Below, in pieces: positions 57,071 through 62,496 of a DNA stretch of 64,000 bases (position 1 is the first letter of the stretch; the number at the start of each line of letters is the position of its first letter). The translations under genes were made by a program, and so were the position numbers. Location: the sequence record OP953026.1, one strand, 5' to 3'. Below the pieces are notes generated by a model that worked only from the letters and a program-made list of their open reading frames with translations, searched no databases and had not been told where the DNA came from.

Positions 57071-58492
57071 ATGTCTAAAAAGAATCAACGATTTGGAAAG
57101 TTTCCTCAACTCAATCGTTTACCTGAAAAACCCATTGTCAAAGACGAAGTTTTATCAGAAGAAACTGAAGAAAAGCCAACTTCTGAAATTGGTCGAGGAT
57201 TAACAAATATTGAATTAGTATCTCCTGAGGAAGTATATGCTACAGCAGATGATATTAATTCATCAGTTAATGCAGTTAACGATACTTCAGAATTAGCTAA
57301 AGTTAACGTAGATGCACTGCGTACTGGCTATGATATTCCTGAAACATGGACAGATGAAAATGTCATTGAATGGTTTACCAATGATGGCATTGCTAAAGGT
57401 AAAACTGAACTCGGTAGCTTTGTATTTGACCCAACCCGTAAATATCGTCCTTATGATGAATGGTCAGATGATGAACTAATCGATGCTGCTAACCATCGTC
57501 TAACTGGTGTAGTTAATGATATCGCAGATATTGCTGATGATATTTTAACTAAACGGGCTAAAGAGAATGAGACTACTGAGGAAGTAATTGTACCGGTAGT
57601 TAATGAAGATACTCTGAAACAAGATATTCGCAATACTGAAGACAGTATCAAGCTTGAAGAATTAGTCAAGCAACTGCGTATTCACACTAGTGATATTCCA
57701 CTAGATTGGTCTACCCAAGAAGTGGTTGATTTTGTTAAACAAGGTATTACTCCACCAAAAACACTACGTGGTAGTTGGGTTAATAGTGTTATTCGTGATA
57801 ATGCTCCACCTACCGATTGGACGACAGCAGAGCTTGAAGACTGGGCTGAAGGACTTATTAAAAATAGTAATCTGATAAAAGATTTTAAAATTGCTATTGA
57901 GTTACGCGATCGTTTATTCTTACCTACCACTAGTCAAGATATTGAAACTATTGTTGAACAATGGAAAGTATTCTCTGGTAAAGATGATATTAAACCAACC
58001 GGGGAAGTTAAAATCTTGAATAGTGAATCAACATCTAATGAACCTGTACTTCGTAAAGGTATGACCAAAATGAACCAAGTATTTATCGAATCTCGTCTAG
58101 AGCAGTTTGCCACTGGTGCTAAACCTGGTGACTATATCACTATCGAACGTGGTGGCGATGCACAAAAGAAACTAGATGATGTATTCAACTACGTAATGAC
58201 AATCGAAGATATTGAAGGCTTTAAATCAGGCATGGATATTATCTTTGATTTCGTTAAGAAAAATCGTAATACTCTATTTAGTGAATCTAACGCACTTCGC
58301 TTTGTTGCTACTCTACCTACTCAGAATAACCGTCAAGAAGCACACATTAATCTTCTTACTCTATTCTGCCTATTTACTAGTGATGTATCAGATGCGCTTT
58401 ATCAGGTAGATATTAACTATCTTGCACGTTTCATCCCTGAAGGTAAACGGCAACTCGTTCTACACTTCTTCCGGCAGAAAGCTGGTATGTAA
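57071..58492 (+). CDS. Hypothetical protein with W[ST]xxE repeats (gp81-like)
   Basis: 473 aa, AAGGA RBS. Confidence 0.75.
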   Translation: MSKKNQRFGKFPQLNRLPEKPIVKDEVLSEETEEKPTSEIGRGLTNIELVSPEEVYATADDINSSVNAVNDTSELAKVNVDALRTGYDIPETWTDENVIEWFTNDGIAKGKTELGSFVFDPTRKYRPYDEWSDDELIDAANHRLTGVVNDIADIADDILTKRAKENETTEEVIVPVVNEDTLKQDIRNTEDSIKLEELVKQLRIHTSDIPLDWSTQEVVDFVKQGITPPKTLRGSWVNSVIRDNAPPTDWTTAELEDWAEGLIKNSNLIKDFKIAIELRDRLFLPTTSQDIETIVEQWKVFSGKDDIKPTGEVKILNSESTSNEPVLRKGMTKMNQVFIESRLEQFATGAKPGDYITIERGGDAQKKLDDVFNYVMTIEDIEGFKSGMDIIFDFVKKNRNTLFSESNALRFVATLPTQNNRQEAHINLLTLFCLFTSDVSDALYQVDINYLARFIPEGKRQLVLHFFRQKAGM

Positions 58493-58527
58493 ACATATCG
58501 CCTCCCCTAGGGGAGGCTTTATGCTGA
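58492..58527 (+). terminator. Intrinsic terminator, identical to 10964-10999
   Basis: 36-nt exact repeat. Confidence 0.85.
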
Positions 58528-58593
58528 TTATTACTTTTACTAGGCACTAATATAGTACGTAGATAAATATCAATATGTGCTGAGGTTATAGCA

Positions 58594-60510
58594 ATGTCTA
58601 ATGAACAACAGGTTACAAATAAGAAAAAGATTAAGGGCATTGAAGCCAAACATATTACTTATTGTACTGATCAATTTGGTAAGTTTACAGATGCGCATTT
58701 CGTTAAAGAACGAATTCATTTTGAAGATGGTACAACTGCAAATAATTTAAGGATGTGGGAAAACTACCAGCGTCCTTTTTGGATTACCGCAAAAGGAATG
58801 CGTAACCATAAAGAAAAGAAAGATTACGAATATGAGCGTAACTTAGTTAAATACATGTCAACTCAAATTGACATGAAACGTAAGATTAGTAAAATCCTAG
58901 GTGACTATTCGGCTAGATCTCTTCGTCAACTAGCGCGTAGTCCTTACCTATATGGCAGTGATGTTAGTTCAACCTGTTATCTGAAGCATGATTATCAAGA
59001 ACGTTATCCTGGTCTAATCTCTCTAAACACTGTTGCTGGCGGTGACATCGAAACCAACGTTTATGAAGCTGAGAACGATGGCCAGATTATCTGTATGTCA
59101 GTTACACATAAGAACAAAGCTTTCCTAGCCTATTTAAAACGATGGGTTAGTGATATTGAAGATCCAGTGAAAGAGACATTAGAACAAGCACAAAAAGAAG
59201 AGGTATTATCACATCTAATTAAAGAACGTGGTCTAGATATTGAAGTAATGGTTGTTGAAACACCAGTAGATATTATTATTGAATGTTTTAAACGACTACA
59301 TACCTGGAAACCAGATTTCTTCGCATTCTGGAATATTAGCTTCGACATTGGTAGAATCTTAAAAACATTAGAACACTATGGTGTTAATCCAGCTGATGTT
59401 TTTTCTGATCCATCGGTACCTAAGAATTATAGGTATTTCCATTTTAAGATTGATGAACCTATGACCACCACTGCATCTGGGGTCACTAAATCTAAAGGAC
59501 CGGAGGATCAATGGCATTGGATTACAGCACCCTCTAGTTTTCAATGTATCGATTCTATGTCAACTTATCGAGTAACTCGATTAGCTAAAGGACGTGATCC
59601 TAACTATCGGTTAGAGTCTATTCTTAGAAAAGAACTAAACATCGATAAATCCACGACCATTAAAAATGATAAGGACTTAGAAGATTTTATTGAAGGTTTT
59701 AATAAACAACTAGTTGACCGACCAGGCGGCGTTATTACTAAATATATTAAAAATGTAGGTAGTAATGAATGGGTACCGGTGGATGATTTTATATTAAATG
59801 ATAACTTTACCTATGGTGATTCTATTAGATATGTAATGGAATTTGGTAAGTTAACCTTTAAAGAAACTGCACATCTTGGTGGTATCGATTGGCACCGTGA
59901 GATGCAGACTAAGCATAAAATCAAATATGGTCTTTATAACATCATCGACTCCATTCGACTAGAACAACTTGATGAACAAGTAAATGACCTTGGTCGCTCT
60001 ATAAGTCTATTCTCTAAGGCATCTGACTATAAGAACTTTAGTTCTAACCCAAAACGACTATGTGACGATATGCACTTCTGGTATTTGAATAGACCAGAGT
60101 CATGTGTCATTGGTTCAAGTTCAGATCAGATGGTGCATGAACTTGATCAATATGTTATTGGCCATAATGATTGGATTGTTACACTACCATCATACATGGC
60201 AGGTCCAAATGGATTGCAGTGTGTTAAAGATTTACCGAATTATAAAACCTTAATCTTCTGTCATATCGCCGACCTTGACATCGTGTCGACATATCCTAAC
60301 GTTAGTCAGATTCTAAATATTGCACGTGAAACATGTGTGATGGAATTCTCAATGATGGAAGGAATTAGTGAACACCATCGCCGTGAAGTTGGCGTAAACT
60401 TAACAGGTGGTAGGGTTAATGCTATTGAAATCACACAGAAGATCATGGGTGCTCCTAAAATGGACACCCTGCTAGAGAAGTTTATTAATACCTATAAGAA
60501 CCCAAAGTAA
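58594..60510 (+). CDS. Family-B DNA polymerase, 3'-5' exonuclease/N-terminal subunit (phiKZ gp82)
   Basis: ExoI GDIET, ExoII WNISFD, ExoIII YNIID and polymerase motif A DLDIVSTYP. Confidence 0.88.
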   Translation: MSNEQQVTNKKKIKGIEAKHITYCTDQFGKFTDAHFVKERIHFEDGTTANNLRMWENYQRPFWITAKGMRNHKEKKDYEYERNLVKYMSTQIDMKRKISKILGDYSARSLRQLARSPYLYGSDVSSTCYLKHDYQERYPGLISLNTVAGGDIETNVYEAENDGQIICMSVTHKNKAFLAYLKRWVSDIEDPVKETLEQAQKEEVLSHLIKERGLDIEVMVVETPVDIIIECFKRLHTWKPDFFAFWNISFDIGRILKTLEHYGVNPADVFSDPSVPKNYRYFHFKIDEPMTTTASGVTKSKGPEDQWHWITAPSSFQCIDSMSTYRVTRLAKGRDPNYRLESILRKELNIDKSTTIKNDKDLEDFIEGFNKQLVDRPGGVITKYIKNVGSNEWVPVDDFILNDNFTYGDSIRYVMEFGKLTFKETAHLGGIDWHREMQTKHKIKYGLYNIIDSIRLEQLDEQVNDLGRSISLFSKASDYKNFSSNPKRLCDDMHFWYLNRPESCVIGSSSDQMVHELDQYVIGHNDWIVTLPSYMAGPNGLQCVKDLPNYKTLIFCHIADLDIVSTYPNVSQILNIARETCVMEFSMMEGISEHHRREVGVNLTGGRVNAIEITQKIMGAPKMDTLLEKFINTYKNPK

Positions 60511-60878
60511 TATATCAGTGGAAGCGCCGAGGAGGATATGAATGTTCATCTGTTGGTGACAAAAGATTCTCGGCTCTTTACGCAAGGCTTCCTGATGGCA
60601 GAACAATTGAGGAAGCTTGGCAGTTAGATTGTAAAGGATATCGCATATACTCCAACCATTGGAAAGCTGGTAAAGGAAAACCACCACTAGACGGGTATAA
60701 TCCCAAATATGATGATTATAAAAATCTGTGGAAAGTATGGGCGGTATCTAATAAACATCTAATGGATGAATTGCGTCAGAATGCAAAAGAACATGATAAC
60801 TATCTTTCTGATGTTTTTGCTTCTACTGATATTTCACAGGCACGTGCTCTAGCAGAACTACTTAATGAAGGATATTAA
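60498..60878 (+). CDS. Start-less 126-codon ORF (NADAR-like) in the -1 frame of gp82
   Basis: ...VIYQWKRRGGYECSSVGDKRFSALYARLPDGRTIEEAWQLDCKG...STDISQARALAELLNEGY*; no ATG/GTG/TTG near the 5' end. Confidence 0.65.
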   Translation, partial: EPKVIYQWKRRGGYECSSVGDKRFSALYARLPDGRTIEEAWQLDCKGYRIYSNHWKAGKGKPPLDGYNPKYDDYKNLWKVWAVSNKHLMDELRQNAKEHDNYLSDVFASTDISQARALAELLNEGY

Positions 60879-60946
60879 AAAATGGAAGGTATTCCTAATT
60901 AAATATTATCAATTGATCATTACTGCTAACATAAACTTCGACACAT

Positions 60947-60979
60947 CATAAAACCCTCCCATTACGGGAGGGTTTATTT
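60947..60979. terminator. Bidirectional terminator
   Basis: AAACCCTCCC-ATTAC-GGGAGGGTTT. Confidence 0.85.
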
Positions 60980-60981
60980 CG

Positions 60982-62496
60982 TTAACTAATTTGGTATTTT
61001 AAATTCTGATTACCGTTTAGAACATAAATCTTACCGTCATTATTAAACGTATTGGCAAAACCTGCATCCACTAAACCAGTTTCTAAATTACCTAAATTTA
61101 TCCATCGTGCTAATCGTGGTTCATAATACTTAATTGGTGCGTTATTTTGATTTTCACCAGCGATTACATAAAGTTCACCAGATGGGCGTATATTAATAGC
61201 TGCACCAAGAGGTATACCTGTAGTTATTGGTTTGGACCAATTATTGTTGGTTTGATTGTACGATATGATTCCAGTGTTAACACCAGCACCAACCGTACCA
61301 CCAATAACGCATACGCTATTATTATAAATACTCACTGAATAATCTTGGGTATATTCCCCAGTATCATTAAATGCTGCACCACTGGTATATGTATCTGTAG
61401 TTGGATTGTACATTAATGTAAATCCACGATTATTTGTCGCAGTTGTATCAGCTGCACCTAATATGTAGATTAACCCATTAAGACTAGTTCCACGTGCATA
61501 CCGGCAAGCTATCGTGCCTGGTGATTTTATTTCCCATGTATTAGTTGCAGGATCATAACACTGCATATCTTTAGTAAGTACACCATCTGTGGCACTTTCA
61601 CCACCATAGAAATATACTTTACCATTAAATGCAACAGCCGAGCATTGTTTAACTGCTATAGGCGTACCAGTTGGTTGTAATGTTGTTAACTTACCCGTGA
61701 CTAAATTCAGTGTACGTAGAGCAGTATTAGCATTATTCTTACCACCGTAATAATAGACTAAGTTACCTATTTGGGCACCTGCTGCCATTTCGTTATCAGT
61801 TTCAAAATCAGTAAGTTTAATAACATTATCTTTAACGAATGGATATGTACCACTAGCATAAACCACTGGACGCCAACCTTGGGTTGCAGCACCCGTTTCA
61901 CTACTTGACGAGCTAGTTATATCAATCGCATAGTAGCCACGATAGAGCTGGTCATTAACTGGATCACTACCTGGGTCTCTTCCCCAGTTAGTAGTACCAT
62001 CAGTGCTAATACCACCAGCGACCGCTTGGTTAATACCTAAGTCATTATCTGTAAATTTATAAGGCCAGTTAGCACCATTTAAATTAGATACGTGAACATT
62101 ATAAAGTAACCTTTGCCATTCTGATGTGGCACCAGCCATTGTTAATAAACCAAATTTATAAATGTTCCCCATAAATCTAACTTCATAGTCACCATTACGG
62201 AGTCCGGCATTATTAAGCCGTGATTTTTGTATTGATTTACGAGCTGGTTTCTTTGGTATGTAACAAGTAACATTTTTATTAGAGAACTTTAACCATGGTT
62301 GTCCATCATTGATTACTGTTCCAAATGTCATATTAACTAATTTAGCTGCATCATCATAACCAAATAATTCTGAAGATGTTGTTTCACCATACAAACCTAA
62401 TTCCCTTGTCCCAGCTATCAGTGTTTTAGGACCTGGATAAGGATCGGAATATATAGGCGTATTTGTTAGTCCAGAAGACAACAATAACTCAAACAT
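60982..62496 (-). CDS. Virion protein with Kelch-repeat beta-propeller (gp83-like, tail-fibre family)
   Basis: Repeated YxxGG...YDPxTxxW Kelch units after a PGPKTLIAG N-terminal domain. Confidence 0.8.
   Translation of the reverse strand: MFELLLSSGLTNTPIYSDPYPGPKTLIAGTRELGLYGETTSSELFGYDDAAKLVNMTFGTVINDGQPWLKFSNKNVTCYIPKKPARKSIQKSRLNNAGLRNGDYEVRFMGNIYKFGLLTMAGATSEWQRLLYNVHVSNLNGANWPYKFTDNDLGINQAVAGGISTDGTTNWGRDPGSDPVNDQLYRGYYAIDITSSSSSETGAATQGWRPVVYASGTYPFVKDNVIKLTDFETDNEMAAGAQIGNLVYYYGGKNNANTALRTLNLVTGKLTTLQPTGTPIAVKQCSAVAFNGKVYFYGGESATDGVLTKDMQCYDPATNTWEIKSPGTIACRYARGTSLNGLIYILGAADTTATNNRGFTLMYNPTTDTYTSGAAFNDTGEYTQDYSVSIYNNSVCVIGGTVGAGVNTGIISYNQTNNNWSKPITTGIPLGAAINIRPSGELYVIAGENQNNAPIKYYEPRLARWINLGNLETGLVDAGFANTFNNDGKIYVLNGNQNLKYQIS

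What the first reader, a model, noticed from the sequence alone, without database searches (positions are those of the whole stretch)
60498..60878. Candidate -1 frameshift fusing the DNA polymerase exonuclease subunit to a NADAR-like domain
Seen: gp82 ends AAC CCA AAG TAA. C CCA AAG (60501-60507) is an X XXY YYZ heptamer ending in the A AAG shift-prone codon, immediately before the stop. The -1 frame opens at 60498, right after a TAA, and runs 126 codons with no usable start codon. A slip gives ...TYKNPK-VIYQWKRRGGYECSS..., a 761-aa fusion. A weak TATATC/GATATG stem follows the stop. Inference: RFSALYARLPDGRTIEEAWQ..K parallels the FSNF..DG..TxEHxYQAxK core of NADAR hydrolases, and some phage NADARs remove DarT-type ADP-ribose from DNA. 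A replisome-tethered eraser of DNA ADP-ribosylation made at sub-stoichiometric level would be a new anti-defence arrangement.
Basis: partly seen in the sequence, partly recalled or inferred. Interest (0 to 1): 0.85.

Follow-up and report, generated by a model that had tools for sequence, protein, structure and literature searches.

The report
Frameshift extension of phiKZ DNA polymerase
In phiKZ-type giant phages the gene for the front half of the DNA polymerase ends on a slippery sequence, so some ribosomes probably shift back one base and add a conserved 123-residue enzyme-like domain that no genome record annotates in full.

Summary
The window is a phiKZ-like phage. gp82 (58594-60510) is the N-terminal DNA polymerase subunit (DNAP-N). 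It ends C_CCA_AAG-TAA (60501-60510). A 126-codon ORF in the -1 frame (60498-60878) has no ATG/GTG/TTG before 60762.

Comparison supports a programmed -1 frameshift. Of 18 distinct polymerase-ORF junctions, 15 are in the -1 arrangement. Each has C_CCA_AAG, G_GGA_AAG or A_AAA_AAG in the polymerase frame, with the -1 frame open through it. These are the three most shift-prone bacterial heptamers. Ten of the 15 have no start codon ahead of the conserved motifs. The ORF is under strong purifying selection: dN/dS is 0.03-0.12 with synonymous sites saturated, and within Phikzvirus synonymous changes outnumber nonsynonymous ones (9:1, 5:1, 13:2). No record and no paper I found reports the fusion.

The NADAR reading is a lead only. 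Pfam and profile-profile tests are negative. Foldseek's only sizeable non-family matches are NADARs, but weak (TM 0.4-0.58). The order of secondary-structure elements matches YbiA. Fusion partners and neighbours belong to the NAD/ADP-ribose network. Any anti-DarT role is untested.

Frameshift fusion: about 0.8. NADAR-like enzyme: about 0.35-0.4.

The parts
58594..60510 (+). gp82 = DNAP-N, the N-terminal subunit of the split B-family DNA polymerase (638 aa); zero-frame product
   Evidence: ORF, translation; phrog_3011 DNA polymerase, E 1.6e-241; annotated PHIKZ082 DNA polymerase; cryoEM preprint 10.64898/2026.09.30.755723
60501..60507 (+). Slippery heptamer C_CCA_AAG, on the last two sense codons of gp82
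   Evidence: Sequence. Conserved as C_CCA_AAG, G_GGA_AAG or A_AAA_AAG in 15 distinct junctions. Background rate 3 per 16,623 codons. Named among the most efficient E. coli motifs (PMC4066793; PMC5009743).
60508..60510 (+). Zero-frame TAA directly 3' of the heptamer. It ends the 638-aa product and may slow the ribosome at the slip site (inference).
   Evidence: The stop directly follows the heptamer in 9 of the 10 C_CCA_AAG/G_GGA_AAG junctions and is one codon later in 201phi2-1.
60498..60878 (+). -1 frame ORF of 126 codons plus stop. The part decoded after a shift would be 60507-60875 (123 codons). It encodes a domain of phrog_9995.
   Evidence: phrog_9995 E 1.8e-55; dN/dS 0.03-0.12; syn:nonsyn 9:1, 5:1, 13:2 within Phikzvirus; AF2 model pLDDT 95.6
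60762..60878 (+). 'PHIKZ082.1', the 38-aa piece annotated in public records. It is the C-terminal end of the -1 ORF read from its first in-frame ATG.
   Evidence: phrog_33573; first in-frame start at 60762
60538..60627 (+). 29-aa zero-frame ORF behind AGGAGG, annotated in some records and probably spurious. The AGGAGG spells the Arg-Gly-Gly codons of the -1 ORF.
58500..58517 (.). Terminator-like hairpin upstream of gp82, a likely boundary of the transcription unit
60951..60975 (+). Terminator-like hairpin with T-run about 70 nt after the -1 ORF stop. gp82 and the ORF lie in one unit with no promoter or terminator match between them.

Best explanation
Shown. gp82 (DNAP-N) ends on C_CCA_AAG followed directly by TAA. 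A conserved, selected 126-codon ORF lies in the -1 frame with no start codon of its own. Relatives keep a shift-prone X_XXA_AAG heptamer at the junction.

Inferred mechanism. With tRNA-Pro on CCA in the P site and tRNA-Lys on AAG in the A site, a fraction of ribosomes slips back one base (CCA to CCC, AAG to AAA). Those ribosomes then read GUA at 60507-60509 and continue to 60875. Most ribosomes terminate and make the 638-aa DNAP-N. The slipped fraction makes a 761-aa DNAP-N with a 123-residue C-terminal domain. No stimulatory RNA structure was found, so the fraction may be only 0.3-4%. The adjacent stop codon may raise it.

Inferred role. The fusion ties the domain to the replicative polymerase, and so also carries it into the phage nucleus, where DNA replication takes place in this phage family. 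In phages without this polymerase arrangement the same domain is a free early protein or a module of giant multi-domain proteins.

Weaker inference on the domain. It is probably a small enzyme of the NAD/ADP-ribose or nucleotide-processing network with a minimal NADAR-like fold. It could remove ribosyl-type adducts from DNA or nucleotides at the fork.
For: - Site and frames.
- 18 distinct junctions from GenBank phages and IMG/VR. Fifteen have the ORF in the -1 frame with an in-phase heptamer and the -1 frame open from heptamer to domain.
- C_CCA_AAG occurs in phiKZ, PhiPA3, L079, L019, L021, PS119XW, Phabio, Viktualia and 201phi2-1. G_GGA_AAG occurs in L022. A_AAA_AAG occurs in Noxifer, L028, L053, L027 and L060.
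- In L027 and L060 the A_AAA_AAG sits at the homologous position, directly before the Val-x-x-x-Trp start of the domain.
- The codon before CCA always ends in C although it encodes Asn, Pro, Ser, Leu, Ala or Val. The DNA upstream is otherwise unalignable.
- Ten of the 15 have no ATG/GTG/TTG before the conserved motifs.
- Chance of such a heptamer in each permissive window is 5e-4 to 2e-2.
- Purifying selection covers codons 2-88, upstream of the first in-frame start: pS about 0.70, pN 0.05-0.18. It also acts within the ATA-bearing Phikzvirus clade.
- The three heptamers are the most efficient in E. coli (PMC4066793; PMC5009743).
- gp82 and the ORF share one terminator-bounded unit.
- 46 phage records encode an identical -1 ORF product, so this is not a sequencing error.
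- Domain: confident model. There are 890 representatives, many in multi-domain proteins.
- Fusion partners are DUF4326 (18 of 78), SLOG, RNase H, 2OG-Fe(II) oxygenase, guanylate kinase and SF1 helicases.
- Neighbours include SLOG, NadV, NUDIX, Macro and ART-PolyVal.
- NADARs are the only non-family matches in the PDB search with TM above 0.4. Element order matches a YbiA model.
Against: - There is no direct evidence of the trans-frame protein. No proteomic or ribosome-profiling data could be examined.
- No conserved stimulatory structure or upstream SD-like element was found, so efficiency could be very low.
- Five of the 15 -1 lineages have a possible start: ATG at the aligned first codon in PhiPA3 and L079, GTG there in 201phi2-1 and Viktualia, and GTG one codon upstream in PS119XW. 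A free protein may therefore also be made.
- D6 and Psa21 have the ORF in the +1 frame with GTG/TTG and no heptamer. Fusion is therefore not obligatory for the domain's function.
- The 2026 cryoEM work obtained an active polymerase from the 638-aa gp82 alone.
- P. aeruginosa may have a tRNA-Lys that pairs fully with AAG, which would lower slippage (general point in PMC4066793; not checked here).
- Domain function: Pfam NADAR and gp30.3 models do not match. hhalign probability is 0.09-0.13. Foldseek probabilities are at most 0.38. True NADARs match YbiA at TM 0.6-0.84, against 0.4-0.58 for this domain.
Confidence: 0.8

Rival explanations
1. The ORF is a separate gene. After terminating at TAA, ribosomes re-initiate at the overlapping ATA (60510) or another near-cognate codon and make a free 122-aa protein. 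The heptamer plays no part.
For: The codon aligned with ATA is a canonical start in several relatives: ATG in PhiPA3 and L079, GTG in 201phi2-1, Viktualia and D6, TTG in Psa21. PS119XW has GTG overlapping TGA. Stand-alone homologues with their own ATG begin at about this position. The phrog_9995 profile starts at residue 6 of the ORF.
Against: L019, L021, L022 and Phabio have ACA, ACT, GTT and GTA at that codon, each two changes away from AUG. The five A_AAA_AAG genomes have no start at all before the conserved motifs. There is no SD-like sequence ahead of ATA. This model does not explain why CCCAAAG, GGGAAAG or AAAAAAG is kept, third codon positions included, while the flanking DNA is saturated. 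It may still operate alongside frameshifting in some lineages.
Confidence: 0.1
2. The ORF is a decaying gene that lost its start codon, or a sequencing error, and is not expressed in phiKZ-like phages.
For: There is no canonical start. Public records annotate only a 38-aa remnant or nothing.
Against: 46 records encode an identical product. dN/dS is 0.03-0.12 against relatives. Within Phikzvirus, changes are 9:1, 5:1 and 13:2 synonymous to nonsynonymous. The 126 codons contain no stop in an AT-rich genome. All 23 residues invariant in the family alignment are present, since they are numbered on this protein.
Confidence: 0.02
3. The fusion arises by transcriptional slippage of the phage RNA polymerase on the A run, not by ribosomal slippage.
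For: The A_AAA_AAG lineages have six consecutive A.
Against: Ten of the 15 junctions have only three A (CCCAAAG or GGGAAAG), too short for polymerase slippage by established knowledge. All sites obey the X_XXY_YYZ phase rule, which matters only for tRNA re-pairing.
Confidence: 0.03
4. The frameshift fusion is real, but the appended domain is not a NADAR-type hydrolase. It is a different enzyme or a binding module, for example for a nucleotide, DNA or a partner protein such as the Pseudomonas-specific 'little finger' insertion of DNAP-N.
For: No sequence or profile link to NADAR. Fold matches are below significance. The domain has about 120 residues against 150-190 and lacks two helices of YbiA. 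The Glu-to-Lys spacing is 8 rather than 7. Fusions to RNase H, helicases and a 2OG-Fe(II) oxygenase fit any nucleic-acid-directed role. The preprint suggests the LF domain binds a protein found only in this phage subset.
Against: Twenty-three invariant columns, many of them charged or polar, look catalytic rather than structural. NADARs are the best structural neighbours in both libraries. The context is rich in NAD/ADP-ribose enzymes, which the literature describes as NADAR and Macro partners (PMC9503650).
Confidence: 0.45

Closest known systems
E. coli dnaX tau/gamma -1 frameshift (A_AAA_AAG)
   Same: A -1 ribosomal frameshift on an X_XXA_AAG heptamer in a replisome gene gives two products from one mRNA (PMC5009743). 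The Noxifer-type relatives use the identical heptamer.
   Different: In dnaX the shift truncates the protein, acts on the clamp-loader subunit, reaches about 1:1 and depends on an upstream SD-like element and a downstream hairpin. Here the shift extends the catalytic polymerase subunit with an extra domain, and no stimulator was found.
Phage lambda G/GT tail assembly chaperone frameshift (G_GGA_AAG) and similar phage cases
   Same: A conserved low-level -1 frameshift near the end of a phage gene adds a C-terminal domain. The shift is conserved across very divergent phages while the sequence is not. L022 uses the same heptamer.
   Different: Those cases concern morphogenesis genes, not replication. 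In lambda the shifted product tethers the chaperone to the tail tape measure; here an enzyme-like domain would be tethered to a polymerase.
IS3/IS911 transposase frameshift
   Same: Two overlapping ORFs with the second in the -1 frame and no start of its own. X_XXA_AAG motifs are among the best (PMC4066793).
   Different: IS elements usually have a pseudoknot or hairpin stimulator, and the fusion is the active transposase.
NADAR hydrolases: E. coli YbiA, DarG1-type NADAR antitoxins, T4 AdfN (gp30.3)
   Same: The domain is a small alpha+beta protein with the same order of elements as a YbiA model. It has an invariant Glu and Lys on the first core helix. It occurs as an early phage gene in N4-like phages. 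Its context includes SLOG, DUF4326, Macro, NUDIX and NadV. AdfN shows that phage NADARs can remove DarT1 ADP-ribose from DNA (PMC11257639).
   Different: There is no Pfam PF08719 or PF08010 match, and hhalign probability is about 0.1. TM is 0.4-0.58, against 0.6-0.84 among true NADARs. It is shorter by two helices. Activity is unknown.
phrog_9995, uncharacterised phage proteins of 120-140 aa
   Same: Full-length match, E 1.8e-55. Members include PhiPA3 gp084, 201phi2-1 gp143, Delftia phage RG-2014 gp018 and Sphingomonas phage PAU gp29.
   Different: Those members are annotated as free-standing proteins. In the window the domain has no start codon and is reached from the polymerase gene.

Membership tests
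Programmed -1 ribosomal frameshift site (bacterial X_XXA_AAG class) | Slippery heptamer X_XXY_YYZ in phase with the upstream (zero) frame | tested here: met
   C_CCA_AAG at 60501-60507 with zero-frame codons AAC CCA AAG. In-phase heptamers in 15 distinct junctions.
Programmed -1 ribosomal frameshift site (bacterial X_XXA_AAG class) | Overlapping -1 ORF that is open across the heptamer and lacks its own initiation signal | tested here: met
   The ORF opens at 60498 and its first in-frame start is at 60762. No SD-like sequence precedes it. Ten of 15 relatives have no start before the conserved motifs.
Programmed -1 ribosomal frameshift site (bacterial X_XXA_AAG class) | Site conserved at the nucleotide level among diverged relatives | tested here: met
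   The heptamer is kept, or exchanged for another top-efficiency heptamer, while synonymous sites are saturated (pS about 0.7) and the upstream DNA is unalignable. Chance per junction is 5e-4 to 2e-2.
Programmed -1 ribosomal frameshift site (bacterial X_XXA_AAG class) | Stimulatory element: a downstream hairpin or pseudoknot, or an upstream SD-like sequence | tested here: inconclusive
   No significant or conserved structure: z -1.24 and consensus -5.35 kcal/mol. No SD-like sequence upstream. The only shared 3' feature is the adjacent stop codon, in 9 of 10 CCC/GGG-type junctions.
Programmed -1 ribosomal frameshift site (bacterial X_XXA_AAG class) | Trans-frame protein product observed | not testable with these tools
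   No proteomic or ribosome-profiling data were available. No paper found mentions it.
NADAR superfamily (Pfam PF08719; YbiA, DarG1 NADAR, T4 AdfN) | Significant match to the family sequence models | tested here: not met
   No PF08719 or PF08010 hit for the ORF at E<=0.1, for five relatives at E<=1, or for 77 members at E<=0.01. A profile search of PDB sequences did not return YbiA or PnNADAR at E<=10.
NADAR superfamily (Pfam PF08719; YbiA, DarG1 NADAR, T4 AdfN) | Profile-profile homology to bona fide NADARs | tested here: not met
   hhalign of A2 against the YbiA family A4 gives probability 0.09, and against T2 AdfN 0.13. Both alignments have low diversity (Neff about 2.3-2.5), so sensitivity was limited.
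NADAR superfamily (Pfam PF08719; YbiA, DarG1 NADAR, T4 AdfN) | [quoted passage not shown] | tested here: inconclusive
   In the PDB search, YbiA 2b3w has TMq 0.51 and PnNADAR 8bau 0.40, while all other hits are at or below 0.20, but E is 2.7-7.8. BFVD NADARs give TM 0.41-0.53 with probability at most 0.38. The element order equals that of a YbiA model minus two helices. The reciprocal search listed only the top 50 hits, all true NADARs.
NADAR superfamily (Pfam PF08719; YbiA, DarG1 NADAR, T4 AdfN) | Catalytic Glu and Lys on the first core helix (AdfN E36/K43, PMC11257639) | tested here: inconclusive
   Glu38, Gln42 and Lys46 are invariant on helix 37-45. YbiA-family invariants are Glu48, Gln52 and Lys55. 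Glu-to-Gln spacing is equal, but Glu-to-Lys is 8 against 7. No residue-level superposition was possible.
NADAR superfamily (Pfam PF08719; YbiA, DarG1 NADAR, T4 AdfN) | ADP-ribosyl or N-glycosidic hydrolase activity | not testable with these tools
   This is a biochemical property. Only contextual support exists.
phrog_9995 (uncharacterised phage protein family) | Full-length match to the family profile | tested here: met
   E 1.8e-55, residues 6-126 on profile positions 2-123 of 124. 208 relatives at 90% clustering and 890 representatives at 50%.

The most novel reading that the evidence does not exclude
A replicative DNA polymerase catalytic subunit carries, through a conserved programmed frameshift, a minimal NADAR-like eraser enzyme into the phage nucleus and to the replication fork. 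A small share of replisomes could then remove ADP-ribose-type base adducts, such as those made by DarT-like defence enzymes, from the template as it is copied. This would be replisome-coupled counter-defence, with the frameshift setting the dose.
Probability: 0.2. Interest if true: 0.88.

Novelty: new variant of a known kind. Interest (0 to 1): 0.72.

Why it matters
phiKZ is the model nucleus-forming jumbo phage, and its polymerase has just been solved as a gp82-gp50-Rhc machine with no mention of a second gp82 isoform.

- If the frameshift operates, every Phikzvirus genome and several related genera lack an annotated polymerase isoform. A conserved 123-residue domain of a large, uncharacterised family (890 representatives) would gain a physical link to DNA replication.
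- It would be, to my knowledge, the first recoding event that extends a phage replicative polymerase subunit with an extra enzyme-like domain.
- It suggests how a small protein could enter the phage nucleus, by travelling on an imported subunit.
- It gives a concrete handle on the function of a domain that recurs next to SLOG, DUF4326, Macro, NUDIX and NadV genes and inside giant multi-domain proteins of phages and plasmids.
- It is directly checkable in existing proteomic or ribosome-profiling data.

Tried and rejected
- Pfam, NCBIfam, PADLOC and PDB sequence searches of the ORF and relatives gave no meaningful hit.
- Five giant proteins with the domain and three plasmid-encoded ones, two of them giant, had no Pfam hits.
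- hhalign against a YbiA-family alignment and against T2 AdfN was negative.
- The downstream RNA stimulator was rejected. The single-sequence fold is not better than shuffles, the consensus of 8 relatives is weak, and there is no Rfam match in 58000-61500 other than terminator-like noise. A GGAGGA/TCCTCC hairpin seen in PhiPA3-type sequences starts about 22 nt after the heptamer and is not kept in phiKZ, so I did not count it.
- No tRNA genes lie in the window.
- Literature searches for phiKZ with frameshift, gp82 or gp82.1 found nothing on this site.
- A paper on the rhodanese-phosphatase superfamily, recalled from memory as a likely source on DUF4326, is not held.
- The reciprocal fold search, YbiA model against viral structures, listed only the 50 best hits. 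All were true NADARs, so it could not show whether this family is also hit.
- Sequencing error and pseudogene readings were rejected. Transcriptional slippage was rejected for the CCC/GGG-type sites.
Full report
**What the window is.** The region matches Pseudomonas phages of the genus Phikzvirus at 99-100%. The 638-aa ORF at 58594-60510 is PHIKZ082, or gp82. A 2026 preprint shows gp82 is DNAP-N, the N-terminal subunit of a split B-family DNA polymerase. It holds the N-terminal domain, the exonuclease, part of the palm with motif A Asp562, and a palm-insertion segment at residues 589-638. It works with gp50 (DNAP-C) and gp155 (Rhc) (10.64898/2026.09.30.755723). That paper has no occurrence of 'frameshift' or 'slippery'.

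**Check of the observation.**
- The zero-frame codons are AAC CCA AAG TAA, so C_CCA_AAG lies at 60501-60507 in the right phase and the stop at 60508-60510.
- The -1 frame has TAA at 60495-60497 and is then open for 126 codons to TAA at 60876-60878.
- The first in-frame ATG/GTG/TTG is at 60762. Public records annotate only that 38-aa tail ('PHIKZ082.1'), sometimes with a 29-aa zero-frame ORF at 60538-60627, or nothing at all.
- No record joins the two frames.

**Is it more than chance?** In the window's 47 long ORFs, in-frame X_XXA_AAG occurs 3 times in 16,623 codons. One of those is this site, on the last two sense codons of gp82. The chance of one falling in the four-codon stretch where both frames are open is about 7e-4.

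**Comparative evidence for recoding.** A tblastn search of the ORF found 91 phage records, and an IMG/VR scan gave 80 loci. In 18 distinct genomes or contigs the ORF directly follows the DNAP-N gene.
- In 15 of them the ORF is in the -1 frame. An in-phase slippery heptamer lies where the -1 frame is already open, and that frame stays open into the domain.
- C_CCA_AAG followed directly by a stop occurs in phiKZ, PhiPA3, L079, L019, L021, PS119XW, Phabio and Viktualia. In 201phi2-1 the stop is one codon later.
- G_GGA_AAG followed by TAG occurs in L022.
- A_AAA_AAG lies 24-63 nt before the stop in Noxifer, L028, L053, L027 and L060. In L027 and L060 it sits at the homologous place, directly before the Val-x-x-x-Trp start of the domain.
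- These are the three heptamers measured as most efficient in E. coli. C_CCA_AAG reached 54% with the IS3 pseudoknot (PMC4066793; PMC5009743).
- The codon before CCA always ends in C although it encodes six different amino acids. The polymerase tail upstream varies in length and cannot be aligned.
- Ten of the 15 have no canonical start between the last upstream -1 stop and the conserved motifs.
- At the codon aligned with phiKZ's ATA, relatives carry ATG, GTG, ATA, ACA, ACT, GTT or GTA. Initiation there cannot be the general route.

**Is the ORF translated?**
- Against PhiPA3, L079 and L019 the ORF shows dN/dS of 0.03-0.12 with synonymous sites saturated (pS about 0.70).
- The same holds for codons 2-88, upstream of the first in-frame start. 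The same DNA read in another frame shows no such pattern.
- Within Phikzvirus, where all genomes carry ATA and no start, differing codons are 9:1, 5:1 and 13:2 synonymous to nonsynonymous.
- 46 records encode an identical product.
- gp82 and the ORF lie between two terminator-like hairpins, with no promoter or terminator match between them.

**Exceptions.**
- In D6 and Psa21 the ORF is in the +1 frame. It overlaps the last ten or so polymerase codons and has GTG or TTG at the aligned first codon, with no heptamer. There the domain is probably a separate, translationally coupled protein.
- In L074 and L075, which are identical over the locus, the domain follows the polymerase ORF in the same frame directly after TAG and has no start. 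This suggests stop-codon readthrough or a reassigned TAG.
- These cases show that physical or translational linkage to DNAP-N is the conserved theme, reached in more than one way. Covalent fusion is not strictly required.

**Stimulators and efficiency.**
- I found no stimulator. The downstream fold is not better than shuffles (z -1.24). The consensus structure of eight relatives is weak, at -5.35 kcal/mol with a covariation term of -0.23. There is no SD-like sequence upstream.
- The only shared 3' feature in the CCC/GGG group is the adjacent stop.
- Published values for these heptamers without a stimulator are about 0.3%, rising to about 3.7% in a favourable 3' context (PMC4066793).
- The fusion would then be a minor isoform. 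That the adjacent stop raises the rate is my inference.

**The domain.**
- It is phrog_9995, of unknown function. It gives no Pfam, NCBIfam, PADLOC or PDB sequence hit.
- The family is large: 208 clusters and 890 representatives at 50% identity.
- It occurs as a free 120-140-aa early protein in N4-like Achromobacter and Delftia phages and others. It also occurs inside giant proteins of 1,300-6,000 aa, for example on Gloeothece plasmids.
- An alignment of 73 members has 23 invariant columns. They include Glu15, Ser17, Gly20, Asp21, Arg23, Ser25, Arg35, Glu38, Gln42, Asp44, Lys46, Lys59, Asp105 and Gln114. That pattern looks catalytic.
- The AlphaFold model is confident, with pLDDT 95.6.

**Test of the NADAR idea.** Sequence-based tests fail.
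- No member hits Pfam NADAR or the T4 gp30.3 model.
- hhalign against a YbiA-family alignment gives probability 0.09. That alignment was built from E. coli ybiA, fetched from NC_000913.3, and the comparison is.
- hhalign against T2 AdfN gives 0.13. AdfN was located with a primer printed in PMC11257639, and the comparison is.

Structure-based evidence is suggestive but below significance.
- In the PDB search the only hits with TM above 0.2 are YbiA (0.51) and the Phytophthora NADAR with ADP-ribose (0.40), at E 2.7-7.8.
- In the viral library, after four family members, named NADARs recur at TM 0.41-0.53 with probability at most 0.38.
- The same proteins match a YbiA model at E 1e-13 to 1e-4 and TM 0.6-0.84.
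- The order of secondary-structure elements is the same in both models: strand, short turn, hairpin, helix, long helix pair, strand, C-terminal helix. YbiA has two extra helices.
- Invariant Glu38, Gln42 and Lys46 lie on the first helix. The YbiA family has invariant Glu48, Gln52 and Lys55, and AdfN needs Glu36 and Lys43. The Glu-to-Lys spacing differs by one.

Context fits an NAD/ADP-ribose or nucleotide role.
- Of 78 mid-size multi-domain members, 18 carry DUF4326, eight a SLOG domain, three RNase H and two DUF488-N3a. Single cases carry a 2OG-Fe(II) oxygenase, a guanylate kinase or SF1 helicases. These lie in separate regions of the protein.
- Flanking genes of free-standing copies include SLOG, NadV, NUDIX, Macro, ART-PolyVal, DUF4326, RtcB and dUTPase.
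- The literature describes DUF4326 and SLOG as typical partners of Macro and NADAR domains (PMC9503650 and PMC7824862).
- I rate 'divergent, minimal NADAR-like enzyme' at about 0.35-0.4. Removal of DarT-type adducts is untested.

**Most likely mechanism.** Most ribosomes end at TAA and make DNAP-N. A small share slips on C_CCA_AAG and adds the domain through the short, variable Lys/Glu/Pro/Ser-rich tail, which would act as a linker. The isoform would place the domain on the polymerase next to the palm-insertion domain. Because replication takes place inside the phage nucleus, it would also bring the domain there. The preprint notes that the little-finger insertion of DNAP-N occurs only in Pseudomonas chimalliviruses and may bind a protein specific to them. 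The extension has the same distribution, so a link is possible, but that is speculation.

**Novelty.** The mechanism is a known kind. The case is new: a conserved recoding site in a phage replicative polymerase subunit, missed in all records examined and in the papers I could search.

- I did not build the joined 761-aa sequence, so I could not model the fusion.
- While thinking, before testing, I wrote approximate NADAR motif letters from memory. I also briefly compared consensus lines that the alignment tool had printed.
- Neither is used as evidence here. The comparison above rests on the tools' lists of invariant columns and on search scores.

Noticed in passing
L018:1920-2225 (PhiPA3, IMG/VR copy); L005:1-609: The PhiPA3 DNAP-N gene is interrupted by a group I intron (Rfam RF00028, 71.7 bits, E 5e-17). 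GenBank gene 085 ends at the intron. The second exon, which runs to the CCCAAAG-TAA, is unannotated.
   Followed up: partly
L074:1735-2110 and L074:2156-2881 (identical to L075): This locus, identical in two IMG/VR contigs of 150 kb and 117 kb, has an intron-like insert in the polymerase gene (RF00028, 48.8 bits, just under threshold). The domain follows the polymerase ORF in the same frame directly after TAG and has no start codon. This may be stop-codon readthrough or a reassigned TAG.
   Followed up: partly
L010:560-625 (phage D6); L011:560-620 (Psa21): In these two relatives the domain ORF is +1 to the polymerase frame. It overlaps the last ten or so polymerase codons and has GTG or TTG at the aligned first codon. 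There is no slippery heptamer.
   Followed up: partly
L097:1770-5876; L099:1359-6185 (Gloeothece plasmids): The same domain sits near the C-terminal end of giant proteins of 1,368 and 1,608 aa that have no Pfam hits. They lie next to transposases, NB-ARC and TPR genes and CRISPR genes. Many representatives are 2,000-6,000 aa long.
   Followed up: partly
window 60538-60627: A 29-aa zero-frame ORF behind a perfect AGGAGG is annotated in some phiKZ-like records. The AGGAGG is the Arg-Gly-Gly codons of the conserved -1 ORF, so this ORF is probably spurious.
   Followed up: no
window 60982-62496 (-): The convergent neighbour gp83, annotated as a virion or head structural protein, contains Kelch repeats (Pfam E down to 2e-16).
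   Followed up: no
L016:1447-1998 (Sphingomonas phage PAU gp29): This family member carries a C-terminal extension of about 55 residues that contains several cysteines and may be a zinc-ribbon-like tail.
   Followed up: no
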